From positions 1 through 39,864 of the forward strand of contig JALMLS010000314.1 in NCBI GenBank assembly GCA_038496445.1: a DNA stretch of 39,864 nucleotides, written 5' to 3'. This stretch comes from Trichosphaerium sp. ATCC 40318. Lineage: Eukaryota; Protista; Tubulinea. Of this stretch, positions 15,269 through 20,952 are shown one piece after another. The position numbers and the translations under genes are program-made. Under the pieces are notes generated by a model. It was not told the origin of the DNA, ran no database searches, and saw nothing but the letters and a program-made list of their open reading frames with translations. Each line of letters opens with the position of its first letter. Position 1 is the first letter of the stretch.

Positions 15269-17783
15269 ATGGCACAAGTTATAGTAGTAGGCGGTGGTCT
15301 ATCTGGTTTATCTACCGCACATACCGTACTCGAAAGAGGCGGTAGAGTGTTGGTTATCGACAAAAATGCTTTCATGGGCGGTAACTCAACCAAAGCAACG
15401 TCTGGTATTAACGGAACGCCAACGCGCACCCAAGCAGAACACGGTACGTTTTTTATTTAGATTACGGCTATGACGTCACGCTAACTCGTATAGGATACGC
15501 TGATAACGTTCGCATATTCGAAGAGGACACTGCGCTTTCAGCAAGCGGCGGTAAATCCAAGGAGCCTTCCCCACTAGCAAAGGTACTATGCGGAGAGAGT
15601 GGACCAGCAGTAGAATGGTTAATCGGTACGTTTTATTTTAAACGCCACGTCAAGCTATTTTTTTCGTTTTCCGTTTAAAACACCTGACGAATCTCTTAAA
15701 CGGGGTTGTTATATCGTAATTATGCTTACGAGACTCTTTTAGAGAAATTCGGCCTTGACATGTCTTGCCTTGGACAACTCGGTGGACACAGCTTCCCACG
15801 TACTCACCGTGGTAAAGAACGCTTCCCTGGTATGACTATCACATACGCTTTGATGGAAAAACTAGAAGAGATTGTACGTAACAACATTATTCCCAAGTAC
15901 TCTGAAAACAGCCTTCAATTTAAAAAAAGTCAACCTTTATTCTTGACTACTCGTCGTATTTGATGATTTCTCTAATTTTCTTGTCTTTAGGCTGAGAAAG
16001 AACCAGAACGTGCTCGTATTATCACCAAAGCACGCGTAACAAAACTACTCAAAGGCGCAAATGGAGCCATTACTGGAGTTTCTTACGAAAAAGACGGTCA
16101 AACATTCGAAGAGAGCGCTGGCGCTGTCGTAATTGCTACTGGCGGCTACGGTGCTGATTTCAGCCAAGATTCAATTTTGCGTTCATGGCGTCCAGATATT
16201 TGCCATCTCCCTACCACAAACGGTACGTATAACACCGTGGCATAGCGGTCTCATATGTTTTAAACGTTTTTGATGACATTGAGACTTTTTCTTTGTTTTT
16301 CTTTTTTTTGACTTTCCTCTCAGGCGATCACTGTACTGGTGATGGTATTAAAATGTCAGAAGAAATTGGCGGCGGTACAACTGATATGAAGTGGGTACAA
16401 GTCCACCCAACCGGTTTGGTCAACCCAGCTGAACCTGATGCTAAAGTCAAGTTCCTTGCTGCTGAAGCACTTCGTGGTGTTGGTGGTCTACTCTTAGACG
16501 CAAATGGTAACAGATTCTGTGATGAAATGGGTCGTAGAGATTACGTCACCGGAGAGATGAACAAAAACAAAGGTCCTTTCCGTCTTGTCCTTAACAGCGC
16601 ATGTGCATCAAAAATTGCATGGCATTGTAAGCACTACGTTGGTAGAGGTCTCATGAAGGAGTTTGATGGTAATGGTCTTGCTGCTGATATGGGTATCCCT
16701 GTATCAAACCTCAAAAAGACATTTGACAAATACAACGAAATTGCAAAGTAAGTCTTGGCGAAAGCCATACAAAAAAACAAAAACAAAAAAACCAATTGCT
16801 AATTATTTTTCTTTTAGAACAAAGAAAGATCCTTACGGCAAAAAGTTTTTCCACTCTGTACCTTTCACAGTTGAAGATAACTACCATGTTGGTTTTGTTA
16901 CACCAGTTATCCATTACTGTATGGGCGGTCTTTGGATTGACACTGACGCCAATGTACTGGTACGTTCTCAGCAAAGATCAAATGACGCTTTTACCTTTTT
17001 GTTTTAAAGTTCACTTCTCACATTGTGTTCAGGACAAAGGAGGTAAACCAATCCCTGGCCTATACGCTACTGGTGAGGTATGTGGAGGAATCCACGGTAT
17101 CAACAGACTCGGTGGTTCTTCTCTATTGGATTGTGTTGTCTTTGGACGTGTTAGCGGATCTACATGTACTCGTTACATCTTGGATCGTATCATGTCAGGT
17201 TCTATGAACCCTCTTGGCGCTGTAAGTACAGTTTCAATGCATTCATGTACTCATTCAATACTAGAACGCTTCTAACCGTGCCTCAATGGTTGCTGGACAC
17301 TTGGCACCTACTGTTACTGTTTCTGTAACACCTGGACAAAGCAGCGTAAACATGAACATCTCATGGGGCGCTAACGCTAATGGTAAGCTTTTTTACAAGG
17401 TTTTAATACTCTGTTATTTATTTCTTCCAACAGCTTCTCAACCGCCAGCCGTCTGCGCAGCAGCACCTGCACCAAAACCAGCCGCTGCACCTGCACCAGC
17501 TCCTGTTGCTCCAGTTGAGATGAAGGAATACACTTGGGAACAAGTTGCCGCTCATAACAAGGAAGACGACTGTTGGGTTGTTGTCAATGGTGAAGTATTG
17601 GATGTGACAAAGTTCCTTCCAGATCACCCTGGTGGCAAGAAGGCTATCCTCTTGTTTGCTGGTAAAGACGCAACTGAAGAGTTCAACATGTTGCACAAAC
17701 CAGAAGTTATTCCAAAATACGCACCAGATGCTGTGATTGGCACCATTGCTGGTGGTAACAAGGCACTCAAAGCGAAGCTTTAA
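15269..17783 (+). CDS. Soluble fumarate reductase flavoprotein (Osm1/Frd1-like, FAD_binding_2) with C-terminal cytochrome b5 domain; ends in PTS1-like AKL
   Basis: Nine exons by eye. GGGLSGL FAD motif, [38 protein letters not shown]. Ala/Pro linker, then b5 HPGG and FNMLH. C-terminus KAKL*. Confidence 0.93.
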
Positions 17784-18082
17784 AACCAAGCTATCTCTCT
17801 CTACCTCTACTTGTTTATTAATCAAAAAAAAAACTACAACATCAGGAGAGCCCAATTGTAAACCTCCATTAAATCCATCAACAAACCAACCCTTTCTTTT
17901 CACACCCTTAGCTAGCTGTTTTTTTTTTCCTTGATTTTTCTTACTTTTTTTTTTTGGTTTCTCAAGAAAATTTGATTTCTCTCTCTGTTGCTGCTTCGTT
18001 ATTGAAAAACAATTGTTCCCCTCCTTAAATCTATAATCTCTCTACCGTTGTTGGTCTATGTGCTCAAAATTTTTATGGTTAG

Positions 18083-20952
18083 GAAGCTGCAGCGGCGCTT
18101 GCAGAAAAAACTGAGCCAAAAAAACCAGAAGGAGGTTCTCAGTTTGTGGATTTTTCGAAACCAAACAATCCAATATCTCTCAAACCTGTTGGTGTTGCTA
18201 AGCCTGGAACAGTTGAAGGTCCTCTATGCGGTGGTACTGCTGATGAGTTACCAAACGAGCGTAAAAAGGCTACATTCGATATTGAAACAATGACGAATAT
18301 TTTGGACGGTGGTCCTAAAAAAACAGCCAGAAGACGTTGGGTATTGGCTCCAAGTGAAGACCATGGTCAATTTGAGAATCGTTATTACTGGGATAGACCA
18401 GAAATGATGAGCCAGCATATTAAAGGATTCATTGAGATTCACAAGCAGTTTGCTTTTAAATACTTGCCTACACGTGAGGAGATATCATGGATGACTGAAA
18501 ACACTATCATGAGTGGTACATTGATGAATCACTACGGATTGTACGGCTACGTTTTGATGAAAACGAAGTTCTCTTTGACTGATGTCTATTCAATTTTTGT
18601 GAACAACAGATTTTTTGTTTTTGTGTTTTTTCAGAAGCTGACGAATATCTTTTTCTCTTTTAGGTTCTTACCTACAATATCTGGAATGGCAAGCCCAGAT
18701 CAAGTTGCTGAATGGATACCTCAAATCATTACTATGCAAATCATCGGTGCTTACGCACAGACAGGTTCGTTTATTTTCTTTTTTTTTTTCAATAAAAACT
18801 CCTTTGATATTCTTGGATGCGTTGCTTCATTGGTACTTACTGTTTTTTTCAAAAAGAGCTTGGACATGGTTCTAACGTCAGAGGTCTACGTACAATGGCT
18901 ACTTATGACAAGGAGACAAAGACATTCATTATGAATACACCTACTTTACGTTCTATTAAATGGTGGCCTGGTACTCTTGGAAAAGTAGCAACACATGCTG
19001 TTGTATACGCACAACTCATCATTGATGGTAACGAATATGGTGTACATGTGTTCTTTATGCAAATACGTGATGAAAACCACAGACCTCTTCCTGGTATTGA
19101 ACTAGGTGATTTGGGACCAAAACTTGGAGATGGCGCTAATGATACTGGTTTTATGAGACTTGATAATGTCAGGTATGTCTTTCTTTATGATCATCACGTG
19201 TATTTTGATGAGTCTCTCTTTTGATGGTTTGTATTAATTGTTTGCTTTTCTTGTAGGATACCTTTGTTTAACATGTTGGCTCGTCATCAACAAGTTACAC
19301 CTGAAGGAGAGTATGTTAAGTCTGATAAGAAGAAAGATCCAAAGATGCACTATGCTACTATGATGTTTACTAGAGGTACCATGGTACGTGGTGCTGGTGG
19401 TTCTCTAGCTAGAGCTGTATGCATAGCAACACGCTACAGTTGTGTACGAAGGTACGTATCTCGCTAAACAAAAAAGCAAAAACGTTGTTATTGACCAAAA
19501 CGTTCAGACAAGGATTCGTCGATACTGATCAAGGTGTTCCTTACAAATCACCAGAAATGAAGATTATTGACTACCAAGTACAAAGGTATGTATTTTATCT
19601 AAATTAGCTTCACCAGTACTTTGTGCACGTGTTCGATGTTAAATTTTTTTTTCTTACTTTTTCTTCTTTTTAGGTACCGTCTCTTCAAGCAAATGGCTCT
19701 TGCGTATGCCATTAAGTTCTCTGGTAAATGGATGATACAAAGTTTCGCTGCTCTAGAAGGATCAAGCACCGCTACATCAATCATTTCAGACACGAAAGCG
19801 CTTAAAGAAGTAGCAGCTACCTCAGCTGGATTAAAAGGTTTATGTACCTTCCTTGTTGCTCAAGGTACGGCCTTTGAAATTTCTGTATTCCTTCTGATGA
19901 ACGATTAATAACTTGTTCAATAGGCATAGAAGACTGCAGAAAATGTTGTGGCGGTAATGGTTATCTCCTAAACTCAGGAGTTGCTGCACTTGCCGGAGAT
20001 TATGTTTGGCAAACAACTGCTGAAGGAGATTGGATTCTTCTCATGCTCTTGACAGCCAGGTTCTTGCTCAAGACACTTGGTAAGGTCCAACAAGGTAATA
20101 AGGTAACTGGACCTTGCGCCTACATGGCACCAGCAGGAGGTATGATTTCATCAAACAAACAACTTGCCAAAGACTTGTTTTGCTAATTTTTTACCAAGCG
20201 TCCAATTTTGATATTCGTTCTGCTGCTCCTAGAGCGCCTACTTGCGTAGAGGACTTTCTTGATCCTAAATTTTTGCTTGCTTGGTTCCACTACAGGTCCC
20301 TTTGTATTATTGTCGATGTTGAGAATAGATTCAAGAGGATGCTTGGAGAAGGAAAGAGTTATGCTGAAGTTTGGAATGCTAATTCTATCGAGTTGATAAA
20401 TGCAACAAAATCTCATTGTCTTGCTTTTATGCTGTCCAACTTCATCGATGAGATTCAGGATATCTCTGATGCTAAGTCAAGCCAAGCTTTGCATAAGGTT
20501 TGTGCGTTATTTGGTACTACCAGGATACTTGATGATAACTGGACAGGCTTATTTGATGCTAAAGGGTACGTTGTTTTTTGTTGGTTTTATTTCGTTTTTT
20601 TTTGTATTCCTCACGTGCTGATTGGTTTTTTTTCCAGTTTCGGTTTCTGTAAGCAAGCTGTTAGACAGCTTCTTGATGATTTAAGACCTGACGCCATATC
20701 TCTAACTGATGCTTGGGATATTCCTGACCGTGTATTGAACTCTACATTGGGTAGAAAAGACGGTACGAATGAAAAATACTTTTTAATCAACTAGCTGATT
20801 TCTCATGTTCAGGAAACGTCTATGAAGCGCTCTGGGAGGCTACAAAGAAAGCTCCATTTAACCAAAGAGATCCTTTTGTTGGTTTCAAAGAGTCTCTAGC
20901 ACCTCACTTGGATAAAGAGTTCTTGAAGCGCCATAACAAATCAAATCTTTAA
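18083..20952 (+). CDS. Peroxisomal acyl-CoA oxidase (ACOX1-like) coding exons; no own start codon; ends in SNL
   Basis: ERKKATFD...ILDGG, AYAQTELGHGSNVRGLRT, KWWPG, RYSCVRRQ, CGGNGY, TTAEGD (catalytic Glu position), LNSTLGRKDGNVYE. C-terminus NKSNL*, AATAAA at about 21004. The frame opens directly after TAG at 18080-18082. Confidence 0.92.

What the first reader, a model, noticed from the sequence alone, without database searches (positions are those of the whole stretch)
17434..18300. Acyl-CoA oxidase has no start codon: probable alternatively spliced FRD-cytb5-ACOX triple fusion, both isoforms with PTS1-like ends
Seen: the ACOX frame opens at 18083 right after an acceptor-like TAG and begins with a linker (EAAAALAEKTEPKKPEGG). 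The first in-frame ATG lies inside the conserved ER..A.FD...T.ILDGG start of the ACOX fold, and the two ATGs in 17784-18082 are out of frame. In-frame joins exist from the end of the b5 exon: AAG|GC at 17763 to 18083 (phase 0; GC donors are used elsewhere in this window) or G|GTAACA at 17755 to AG at 18086/18092 (phase 1). There is no AATAAA after the FRD-b5 stop, unlike most genes here. The unspliced form ends -AKL and the spliced form ends -SNL. Inference: a peroxisomal enzyme passing electrons from acyl-CoA through b5 heme to fumarate, allowing O2-independent and H2O2-free beta-oxidation, switched by splicing.
Basis: partly seen in the sequence, partly recalled or inferred. Interest (0 to 1): 0.86.

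Follow-up and report, generated by a model that had tools for sequence, protein, structure and literature searches.

The report
Fumarate reductase–b5–acyl-CoA oxidase fusion gene
One gene of this amoeba-like protist makes either a peroxisome-tagged fumarate reductase with a haem domain or, by removing a rare GC-AG intron, a 1,352-residue protein that also carries the fat-burning acyl-CoA oxidase. This design could let fat breakdown pass electrons to fumarate instead of oxygen.

Summary
The acyl-CoA oxidase (ACOX) frame opens at 18083 directly after TAG. The only upstream ATGs (18058, 18075) are out of frame, and the first in-frame ATG (18290) lies inside conserved coding sequence.

One intron-free 4,200-nt contig (run X13) runs from the fumarate reductase (FRD) 5'UTR through 17762|18083 to the ACOX 3'UTR. 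The intron is GC-AG, 17763-18082, phase 0. The contig breaks in run X1 fit the same junction. Unspliced contigs (X2, X15) read ALKAKL-stop and end about 17886, after ATTAAA.

The spliced 1,352-aa protein aligns end to end at up to 57% identity with more than 30 database proteins of 1,280-1,460 aa. These come from Nematostelium, Calcarisporiella and many metagenomic eukaryotes. Most end in peroxisomal PTS1-like tripeptides.

The six FRD catalytic residues, both b5 haem histidines and the ACOX catalytic glutamate are all present.

Electron flow from acyl-CoA through haem to fumarate is plausible, by analogy with Osm1-Ero1, but it is untested.

I found no paper describing this architecture, although it is widespread and unnamed in databases.

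The scan noted the same kind of gene pair on another piece of this genome (s1-409498), where the follow-up called it two separate messages. My RNA evidence at this locus contradicts that reading.

The parts
14924..14955 (+). 3' end of the non-coding first exon (5'UTR) of the gene. Donor GTACGT at 14956. The 5'UTR intron is 14956-15265.
   Evidence: Loose 5' ends of RNA contigs X2 and X13 before 15264 map exactly to 14933-14953. The sequence context is shown.
15266..17382 (+). Fumarate reductase (FAD_binding_2) coding exons, with ATG at 15269. Exons: 15266-15443, 15494-15625, 15743-15873, 15991-16222, 16324-16747, 16818-16959, 17033-17221, 17265-17382.
   Evidence: All eight GT-AG introns are removed in RNA contigs of 3-4 runs. 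Gene model. Pfam FAD_binding_2 hits. Best PDB match is yeast Osm1, and all six catalytic residues are present.
17434..17762 (+). Exon encoding an Ala/Pro linker and the cytochrome b5 domain. It ends ...GGNK (K624) at the GC donor.
   Evidence: Pfam Cyt-b5, E=1e-25. The HPGG and LH haem ligands align to PDB 4B8N and to the flavocytochrome b2 haem domain.
17763..18082 (+). Alternative GC-AG intron (GCACTC...TTAG, 320 nt, phase 0). When it is retained it supplies the tail ALKAKL, the stop codon and the 3'UTR of the short isoform.
   Evidence: X13 contig record 3 goes from 17760 directly to 18081 with contiguous record positions 1935 and 1936. X1 record 1 ends at 17763, and X1 record 2 carries 27 unlaid letters beyond 18081, which together with the 3 shared letters gives the k-1 overlap. 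All.
17763..17783 (+). Read-through codons ALKAKL plus stop TAA (17781-17783). This is the canonical PTS1 (-AKL) end of the 630-aa FRD-b5 isoform.
   Evidence: Translation. Unspliced contigs X2 record 9 and X15 record 5 run through this stretch.
17868..17886 (+). ATTAAA poly(A) signal variant (17868-17873) and the apparent 3' end of the short mRNA (about 17884-17886).
   Evidence: Sequence. Unspliced contigs of two runs end at 17884 and 17886. X1 and X13 show no coverage beyond the laid contigs between 17916 and 18080.
18083..18289 (+). Linker and conserved N-terminal extension of this ACOX clade (NNPISLKP...CGGTADELPNERKKATFD). It is coding but lies upstream of any in-frame ATG.
   Evidence: The block is conserved in 13 relatives.
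18083..20952 (+). Acyl-CoA oxidase coding exons: 18083-18540, 18664-18764, 18857-19172, 19257-19451, 19508-19585, 19674-19864, 19924-20139, 20199-20565, 20638-20762, 20813-20952. The stop is at 20950-20952 and the protein ends -SNL.
   Evidence: Seven introns are listed as RNA joints. The two introns between 18540 and 18857 are read from the splice sites, the frame and the contigs' record positions. Model. Pfam Acyl-CoA_ox_N, Acyl-CoA_dh_M, ACOX_C_alpha1 and ACOX hits. The catalytic Glu in TAEGD aligns to plant and rat ACOX structures.

Best explanation
Positions 14.9-21.0 kb hold one gene, not two. It gives two mRNAs.

(a) If the weak GC donor after AAG (17762) is not used, translation reads six more codons (ALKAKL) to a stop. 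The message is then polyadenylated about 100 nt later, after ATTAAA. The product is a 630-aa soluble fumarate reductase with a C-terminal b5 haem domain and a canonical peroxisomal PTS1.

(b) If the 320-nt GC-AG intron 17763-18082 is removed, the b5 exon is joined in frame to the start-codon-less ACOX exons. The product is a 1,352-aa FRD-b5-ACOX protein ending -SNL.

These points are shown: the junction and the full-length spliced message in RNA, the unspliced form, colinearity with a large family of single-ORF orthologues, and intact catalytic and cofactor residues in all three domains.

These points are inferred. In the long form the FADH2 made by acyl-CoA dehydrogenation in the ACOX domain is re-oxidised through the b5 haem. 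Alternatively it is re-oxidised directly, as in relatives that lack b5. The electrons pass to the FRD flavin, which reduces fumarate to succinate. The first step of peroxisomal beta-oxidation could then run with little or no O2 and without making H2O2. The short form would be a free peroxisomal fumarate reductase that takes electrons through its haem from other donors. The balance between a weak splice donor and the intronic poly(A) site would set the ratio of the two forms.
For: RNA:
- X13 record 3 is 4,200 nt and at least 99% identical to the window. Its length matches 60 nt of 5'UTR exon, 3 more non-coding bases, 4,059 nt of fused CDS and about 76 nt of 3'UTR. All introns are removed and 17760 is followed directly by 18081.
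- In X1 the FRD contig stops at 17763, the last base shared by both paths. The ACOX contig carries 27 extra letters beyond 18081, which is the pattern expected at a graph branch.
- X2 record 9 and X15 record 5 are unspliced up to 17884 and 17886.
- RNA contigs show no insertions or deletions in 18081-18540, so no frameshift rescues the ATG at 18075.

Sequence: there is no in-frame ATG before 18290, and the protein block upstream of it is conserved.

Orthologues:
- The spliced product gives single BLASTP alignments covering q1-1348 with P0185 (57%), P0193 from Nematostelium gracile, P0196 and P0200 from Calcarisporiella thermophila, and more than 30 others.
- P0039 is an intron-less 1,188-aa FRD-ACOX ORF on a eukaryotic metagenome contig.
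- P0018 carries FRD, b5 and ACOX in one ORF.

Targeting: 31 of 86 fused relatives end in strict [SAC][KRH][LM] and 73 of 86 in relaxed PTS1-like tripeptides.

Catalytic integrity.

Precedent: yeast Osm1 moves electrons from the FAD of the O2-using oxidases Ero1 and Erv1 to fumarate (PMC6242907, PMC5638582).
Against: - All RNA evidence comes from assembled contigs, not single molecules. A contig proves that junction-spanning k-mers exist, but not that every fused molecule starts at the FRD ATG.
- The junction row itself was not among the 15 joints printed. I read it from the piece table.
- In X2 and X15 the FRD contig runs unbroken into the 3'UTR, and the X2 ACOX contig simply ends at 18086. 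In those runs the junction is not demonstrated.
- An earlier follow-up on another piece of this genome (s1-409498) concluded that the two genes give separate messages.
- -SNL is only a weak, non-canonical PTS1.
- No biochemical datum exists for any member of the family. ACOX may keep using O2.
- Nothing shows that the isoform ratio responds to oxygen.
Confidence: 0.72

Rival explanations
1. These are two separate genes. ACOX has its own transcript and is translated from Met70 (ATG 18290) or from a non-AUG codon. The junction contig reflects rare read-through splicing without a protein role. This is the reading an earlier follow-up gave for another piece of this genome.
For: The FRD-b5 ORF has its own stop, a PTS1 and an ATTAAA signal, and unspliced contigs are abundant in X2, X15 and X1. 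The X2 ACOX contig ends at 18086 without upstream sequence. A start at Met70 would give a 659-aa protein, which is a normal ACOX length. Note s1-409498 reached this conclusion.
Against: About 45 conserved residues, including the nearly invariant SGGTAxxLPxER block, lie upstream of Met70. There is no in-frame ATG in 17784-18289. X1 and X13 show no RNA coverage of 17916-18080 apart from the spliced contigs. The frame opens exactly at the acceptor. The spliced product is colinear with more than 30 single-ORF orthologues.
Confidence: 0.08
2. The ACOX-bearing protein is only b5-ACOX. An internal promoter in or before the b5 exon gives a transcript that starts at Met (ATG 17521) of the b5 exon and is spliced to 18083. 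The FRD part would then be found only in the short isoform.
For: An in-frame ATG precedes the b5 domain (VEMKEYTW). b5-ACOX proteins without FRD exist in many relatives, at least 24 among those fetched. Contigs cannot prove that a molecule is continuous.
Against: The X13 contig is unbranched from the 5'UTR exon to the ACOX 3'UTR. The contig depths of the FRD and ACOX parts are equal in X1 and X13 (weak evidence). The closest full-length relatives carry all three domains.
Confidence: 0.07
3. The fusion is real but does not channel electrons from acyl-CoA to fumarate. ACOX still reduces O2. The fusion would serve co-targeting or stoichiometric co-expression, or the b5 would feed another acceptor or take electrons from a b5 reductase for FRD alone.
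For: No assay exists for any member of the family. ACOX catalytic and FAD-binding motifs look ordinary. Some relatives lack the b5 domain (FRD-ACOX) and some lack the FRD domain (b5-ACOX), so no single wiring is obligatory.
Against: Redox domains are fused repeatedly and in a fixed order across a whole ACOX clade. A b2-type haem domain sits between two flavoproteins. The Osm1-Ero1 precedent exists (PMC6242907). From textbook midpoint potentials (my knowledge), electron flow from acyl-CoA to fumarate is slightly downhill, with the b5 haem in between.
Confidence: 0.2
4. The short FRD-b5 message is a by-product of inefficient splicing at a weak donor, that is premature polyadenylation, and is not a functional isoform.
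For: The donor GCACTC departs from the GT consensus, and also from the GCACGTG form reported for other GC introns of this genome (unchecked notes). The isoform ratio seems to differ between runs without any known cause.
Against: The read-through tail ends in a canonical PTS1, -AKL. The strict motif has a chance of about 0.2% for a random tripeptide. A poly(A) signal variant follows at the right distance. The unspliced contig has depth similar to or higher than the spliced one in three runs.
Confidence: 0.15

Closest known systems
Uncharacterised FRD-Cyt-b5-ACOX proteins in public databases, for example Calcarisporiella thermophila XP_069254207.1 and XP_069252397.1, Nematostelium gracile EP01118_P012697, and many JGI, ENA and Logan metagenome ORFs named 'flavocytochrome c' or 'acyl-CoA oxidase'
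   Same: The three domains come in the same order. The spliced product aligns end to end at 50-57% identity. They share the conserved ACOX N-terminal extension and PTS1-like C-termini.
   Different: In those proteins the fusion is a single continuous ORF, and P0039 is intron-less. Here it depends on removing a GC-AG intron that holds an alternative stop, a PTS1 and a poly(A) site, so a short FRD-b5 isoform is also made. None of these proteins has been studied experimentally as far as I could find.
Yeast soluble fumarate reductases Osm1 and Frd1 (PDB 5GLG, 5ZYN; PMC6242907, PMC5638582)
   Same: This is the best structural match of the FRD domain. All six catalytic residues are conserved. Osm1 serves as an anaerobic electron sink for flavin oxidases (Ero1, Erv1) that otherwise reduce O2 to H2O2.
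   Different: Osm1 has no haem domain, is not fused to its partner, and works in the ER and mitochondria. Its partner enzymes are sulfhydryl oxidases, not ACOX.
Shewanella flavocytochrome c3 (Fcc3; PDB 1QJD, 1D4C)
   Same: A haem domain and a soluble FRD flavin domain sit in one polypeptide, and electrons pass from haem to FAD to fumarate. The active site is homologous.
   Different: Fcc3 has an N-terminal tetra-haem c domain, is periplasmic and bacterial, and has no fused dehydrogenase.
Flavocytochrome b2 (yeast L-lactate:cytochrome c oxidoreductase; PDB 1FCB)
   Same: Its b5-type haem domain is the second-best PDB match of the b5 exon. It takes electrons from a flavin dehydrogenase domain of the same chain.
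   Different: The flavin domain is an FMN alpha-hydroxy-acid dehydrogenase, and the final acceptor is cytochrome c.
Trypanosoma brucei glycosomal NADH-dependent fumarate reductase (FRDg)
   Same: It is a multidomain soluble FRD targeted by PTS1 to a peroxisome-derived organelle, and it uses fumarate as a redox sink (PMC9512073; bioRxiv 10.1101/2020.12.30.424822).
   Different: Its domains are ApbE-like, FRD and a cytochrome-b5-reductase-like domain. The donor is NADH, and there is no ACOX.
Canonical peroxisomal acyl-CoA oxidases (rat ACOX1 1IS2, Arabidopsis ACX1 1W07, tomato 2FON)
   Same: They have the same four Pfam domains and the same catalytic Glu, and they are peroxisomal.
   Different: They are stand-alone enzymes of about 660 aa that start a few residues before the ER..A.F motif, and O2 is their acceptor. 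The window's ACOX belongs to a separate clade with a conserved N-terminal extension of about 45 residues and frequent redox-domain fusions.

Membership tests
Acyl-CoA oxidase (ACOX) | The domain set Acyl-CoA_ox_N, Acyl-CoA_dh_M, ACOX_C_alpha1 and ACOX | tested here: met
   Pfam hits on individual exons. The exon fragments score below the whole-protein cut-off for two of the domains, but full-length relatives score far above it.
Acyl-CoA oxidase (ACOX) | Catalytic glutamate in the TxEGD/N motif | tested here: met
   TAEGD aligns with TYEGD of 2FON and 1W07.
Acyl-CoA oxidase (ACOX) | Uses O2 as electron acceptor and produces H2O2 | not testable with these tools
   This needs an enzyme assay. It is the very property that the fusion calls into question.
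Soluble fumarate reductase (Osm1/Fcc3 class) | FAD_binding_2 fold with non-covalent FAD and a clamp domain | tested here: met
   Pfam FAD_binding_2 matches run from model positions 2 to 414 across the exons. Best PDB hits are Osm1 and Fcc3.
Soluble fumarate reductase (Osm1/Fcc3 class) | Six catalytic residues: Osm1 H281, E301, R304, R326, H435, R477 | tested here: met
   The matching motifs are [26 protein letters not shown] and NRLGG, which align to Osm1 and Fcc3. The residue list comes from PMC6242907.
Cytochrome b5 domain | Cyt-b5 fold with two axial His ligands (HPGG and a second His) | tested here: met
   Pfam Cyt-b5, E=1e-25. DHPGG and NMLHKP align to 4B8N and to the b2 haem domain.
FRD-b5-ACOX fusion family (unnamed) | All three domains in one polypeptide, colinear with family members | tested here: met
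   The spliced product gives single BLASTP alignments covering q1-1348. The junction is present in the X13 RNA contig.
FRD-b5-ACOX fusion family (unnamed) | The protein exists at the predicted size | not testable with these tools
   No proteomic data were accessible.
PTS1-targeted peroxisomal matrix proteins | C-terminal tripeptide of the [SAC][KRH][LM] type | tested here: met
   The short isoform ends -AKL. Of 86 fused relatives, 31 meet the strict motif and 73 a relaxed one.
PTS1-targeted peroxisomal matrix proteins | The long isoform carries a functional PTS1 | tested here: inconclusive
   It ends -SNL, which lacks the basic residue at position -2. Localisation was not tested.

The most novel reading that the evidence does not exclude
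The FRD-(b5)-ACOX family may be an acyl-CoA:fumarate oxidoreductase. It would replace O2 by fumarate as acceptor for the first step of peroxisomal beta-oxidation, giving succinate instead of H2O2. It would be widespread in free-living protists and some early-diverging fungi. In this organism the cell would choose, at the level of one weak GC-AG intron competing with an intronic poly(A) site, between a free peroxisomal fumarate reductase and the tethered oxidase-reductase.
Probability: 0.4. Interest if true: 0.85.

Novelty: new variant of a known kind. Interest (0 to 1): 0.7.

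Why it matters
Peroxisomal beta-oxidation is textbook O2-dependent and produces H2O2. How microbial eukaryotes burn fat in peroxisomes at low oxygen is an open question. A conserved, peroxisome-tagged fusion of the oxidase with a haem domain and a fumarate reductase gives a concrete, directly testable answer: an internal electron wire to fumarate. 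It would parallel the way yeast Osm1 rescues the O2-using oxidases Ero1 and Erv1.

This locus adds two things. It gives RNA-level evidence that the long protein is really made in an organism whose genome seems to encode two genes. It also shows a built-in isoform choice in which both products keep a peroxisomal tag. In addition, it shows that automated annotation will split such genes and will mislabel the family.

Tried and rejected
1. Homopolymer or frameshift rescue of ATG 18075 through the A-runs at 18105-18125. Rejected: RNA contigs of X1, X2 and X13 cover 18081-18540 with 0 gaps, and no indel row is listed there. The frame downstream of 18083 is the conserved one.

2. Spliced-leader trans-splicing. 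I suspected this from the identical loose 5' ends before 15264 in X2 and X13. Rejected: the 21-nt leader maps once, to 14933-14953 of the window, followed by GTACGT. It is an ordinary 5'UTR exon.

3. A small upstream ACOX start exon inside 17784-18057. Rejected: there is no ATG at all in that stretch.

4. It was not seen in any contig.

5. A protein-atlas search with the 152-aa first ACOX exon gave only meaningless low-score hits.

6. The bacterial promoter and terminator scan of 17700-18200 found nothing, and it is not relevant to a eukaryote.

7. Eight literature searches combined fumarate reductase, acyl-CoA oxidase, cytochrome b5, fusion and peroxisome, and I read PMC9512073, PMC8887013 and PMC8611851. 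No paper describes the fusion. The library lacks most subscription journals, so this is not proof of absence.

8. The ACOX tree (FastTree only) shows fused and unfused forms interleaved. Many apparently unfused rows are probably truncated metagenome ORFs, so I draw no conclusion about the number of fusion events.

9. I did not fold the protein. The fusion exceeds the size limit, has no single reference, and a model would not give flavin-haem distances here.

Full report
**Observation**

The window is from an intron-rich, AT-rich (36% G+C) eukaryote. A gene starting at ATG 15269 encodes a soluble fumarate reductase (FRD) followed by a cytochrome b5 domain. Read straight through, it stops at 17781-17783 after ...[10 protein letters not shown], giving 630 aa.

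An acyl-CoA oxidase (ACOX) frame opens at 18083, directly after TAG, and runs through ten exons to 20952. It encodes 728 aa ending -SNL.

Between 17784 and 18289 the only ATGs are at 18058 and 18075, and both are out of frame. The first in-frame ATG is 18290.

The Pfam ACOX N-terminal model begins only four residues before that Met. However, an alignment with 13 relatives shows a conserved block, NNxxSLxP...SGGTAxxLPxERxKATFD, that covers about 45 residues upstream of it. The sequence upstream of the first ATG is therefore coding.

One addition is that an ATTAAA poly(A)-signal variant lies at 17868-17873.

**RNA evidence**

I laid contigs of four public runs from four studies on 15200-21000. 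All are intron-free, so they are RNA.

- Run X13 has a single 4,200-nt contig that is at least 99% identical to the window. It starts with 60 letters that map to an upstream 5'UTR exon. It has every FRD intron removed and passes from 17760 directly to 18081 at consecutive contig positions 1935 and 1936. It continues through all ACOX exons.
- Its length equals 60 nt of 5'UTR exon, 3 more non-coding bases, 4,059 nt of fused coding sequence and about 76 nt of 3'UTR.
- Because AG(G) is shared on both sides of the junction, the join is AAG|GC...TAG|GAA.
- Only three letters are shared at the joint, so a k=31 assembler cannot have made the join without reads that span it.
- In run X1 the FRD contig ends at 17763, the last base common to both paths. 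The ACOX contig carries 27 unlaid letters beyond 18081. Together with the 3 shared letters this gives 30, which is k-1, the signature of a branch where both forms are present.
- Runs X2 and X15, and a third X1 contig, hold the unspliced form. It runs from the b5 exon through the stop and ends at 17884 and 17886, 11-13 nt after ATTAAA.
- In X1 and X13 nothing else covers 17916-18080, so there is no sign of an independent ACOX 5' end there.

Caveats: these are contigs, not molecules. The junction is read from the piece table, because the joint table printed only its top 15 rows. In X2 and X15 the junction is not demonstrated.

**Comparative evidence**

A phmmer search of the first ACOX exon against 1.8 billion cluster representatives returned many hits in which the match lies deep inside the protein. 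Pfam shows these to be Cyt-b5 plus ACOX, FRD plus b5 plus ACOX (P0018), three b5 domains plus ACOX (P0022), or FRD plus ACOX (P0039).

P0039 is an uninterrupted 1,188-aa ORF on a metagenome contig whose neighbours (RAD24, Bax inhibitor, MMS19) are eukaryotic.

Searching with P0039 and P0185 found dozens of 1,280-1,460-aa proteins with all three Pfam families. They include complete transcriptome ORFs (P0185; P0193 from the amoebozoan Nematostelium gracile) and two RefSeq 'uncharacterized proteins' of the fungus Calcarisporiella thermophila.

The 1,352-aa product of the 17762|18083 splice aligns with these in single BLASTP alignments covering residues 1-1348. Identity is 57% to P0185 and 54% to the fungal protein. 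The linker across the junction has matching length.

In an ACOX tree the window sits inside a well-supported clade rich in such fusions, apart from canonical animal, oomycete and chytrid ACOX (FastTree only).

**Integrity of the parts**

- FRD domain: the best PDB match is yeast Osm1. The six residues shown by mutagenesis to be needed in Osm1 and Fcc3 (H281, E301, R304, R326, H435, R477; PMC6242907) are all present.
- b5 domain: it has both haem histidines. It is closest to PDB 4B8N and to the haem domain of flavocytochrome b2.
- ACOX domain: it keeps the catalytic Glu.

**Targeting**

The short isoform ends in the canonical PTS1 -AKL, and the long one in the weaker -SNL. Among 86 fused relatives, 31 end in strict [SAC][KRH][LM] and 73 in relaxed PTS1-like tripeptides such as AKL, SKL, GKL and GKF. 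The family is therefore predicted to be peroxisomal.

The read-through of an intron ends in a canonical PTS1, which has a chance of about 0.2%. This argues that the short isoform is functional.

**Mechanism**

Shown:
- One gene gives two messages.
- The long product belongs to a conserved three-domain family.
- All catalytic residues are intact.

Inferred:
- The ACOX flavin, reduced by acyl-CoA, is re-oxidised through the b5 haem and the FRD flavin, with fumarate as final acceptor.
- The redox order is permissive: enoyl-CoA/acyl-CoA lies slightly below the b-type haem, which lies near or below fumarate/succinate. These are textbook potentials from my own knowledge.
- A b2-type haem next to a flavin dehydrogenase (flavocytochrome b2) and a haem domain feeding an FRD flavin (Fcc3) are both established designs.
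- Osm1 is known to take electrons from the FAD of O2-using oxidases to fumarate under anaerobiosis (PMC6242907, PMC5638582).
- Relatives without b5 (FRD-ACOX) suggest that flavin-to-flavin coupling also works.

Whether O2 reactivity is suppressed, and whether splicing responds to oxygen, is unknown.

**Rivals**

- Two separate genes, with ACOX starting at Met70. This conflicts with the conserved upstream coding block, the lack of RNA between 17916 and 18080, and the junction contig.
- A b5-ACOX product from an internal promoter. This is not excluded by contigs, but it is not suggested by them.
- A fusion without electron channelling. This remains possible until the protein is assayed.
- The short form as splicing noise. 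This is unlikely given -AKL and ATTAAA.

An earlier follow-up in this scan (s1-409498, another piece of this genome) described a 'split' FRD / ACOX pair made as separate messages. At this locus my RNA evidence contradicts that reading. I could not inspect the other piece, which may be an allele or a paralogue.

**Novelty**

The architecture is already abundant in public databases under automatic names, so the protein family is not new as sequence. Eight full-text searches and three papers on protist peroxisomes gave no description of it. The library is incomplete, so this is not proof of absence.

Two things are new here. The first is the demonstration that an apparently two-gene locus is one gene. 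The second is the isoform design: a weak GC donor (GCACTC, against the GCACGTG reported for other GC introns of this genome, unchecked notes) competes with an in-intron stop, PTS1 and poly(A) site.

I class it as a new variant of known kinds: soluble FRD, b5 fusion enzymes and ACOX.

**Handling notes**

Noticed in passing
window 14924-15265: The FRD gene has a non-coding first exon ending at 14955 and a 310-nt GT-AG intron in the 5'UTR (14956-15265). The loose 5' ends of RNA contigs at first looked like a spliced leader, but they map here.
   Followed up: yes
window 18083-18289 and alignment A1: This ACOX clade has a conserved N-terminal extension (NNxxSLxP...SGGTAxxLP) ahead of the usual ACOX start. 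It is present in fused and in stand-alone members, including diplonemids. Its role is unknown. It might be a docking or hinge element for the redox partner.
   Followed up: partly
P0172, P0234, P0278, P0279, P0282 (Perkinsus olseni and P. chesapeaki): Perkinsus proteins of up to 2,056 aa combine FRD with two or three b5 domains and no ACOX. Other fetched proteins hold six or seven b5 repeats. This looks like a wider family of modular b5-wired reductases.
   Followed up: no
P0185, P0270, P0269: One 90%-identity cluster holds two Trinity isoforms of the long fusion (1,348 and 1,374 aa) with different N-terminal halves. It also holds a 633-aa FRD-b5-only ORF labelled Gloeochaete wittrockiana (MMETSP1089). 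This may reflect paralogues, isoforms or assembly chimeras. The glaucophyte label may be a contaminant.
   Followed up: partly
P0286 (UniRef 'Peroxisomal acyl-coenzyme A oxidase 1 isoform X1', Hirondellea gigas) and P0303 (Batrachochytrium salamandrivorans BASA81_006493): These b5-ACOX proteins are attributed to an amphipod and a chytrid, yet they group with the protist clade. P0286 is the window's nearest neighbour in the tree. Contamination or mislabelling is possible.
   Followed up: no
L001 and L002, 10001-12232: The closest hit to the first ACOX exon (P0001, 55% identity) lies on long ENA metagenome contigs. There the upstream neighbour is a glycosyl hydrolase on the other strand, with no FRD next to it, so this relative seems to have a stand-alone ACOX.
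   Followed up: partly
window 20964: The run X2 contig lacks 2 bases in the ACOX 3'UTR. About 30 single-base differences distinguish the strains or alleles seen in X1, X2, X13 and X15.
   Followed up: no
window 18058-18293: An 81-codon ORF in the +1 frame, containing the ATGs at 18058 and 18075, overlaps the intron end and the first ACOX exon. Only unspliced RNA would carry these ATGs. I treated it as chance.
   Followed up: partly
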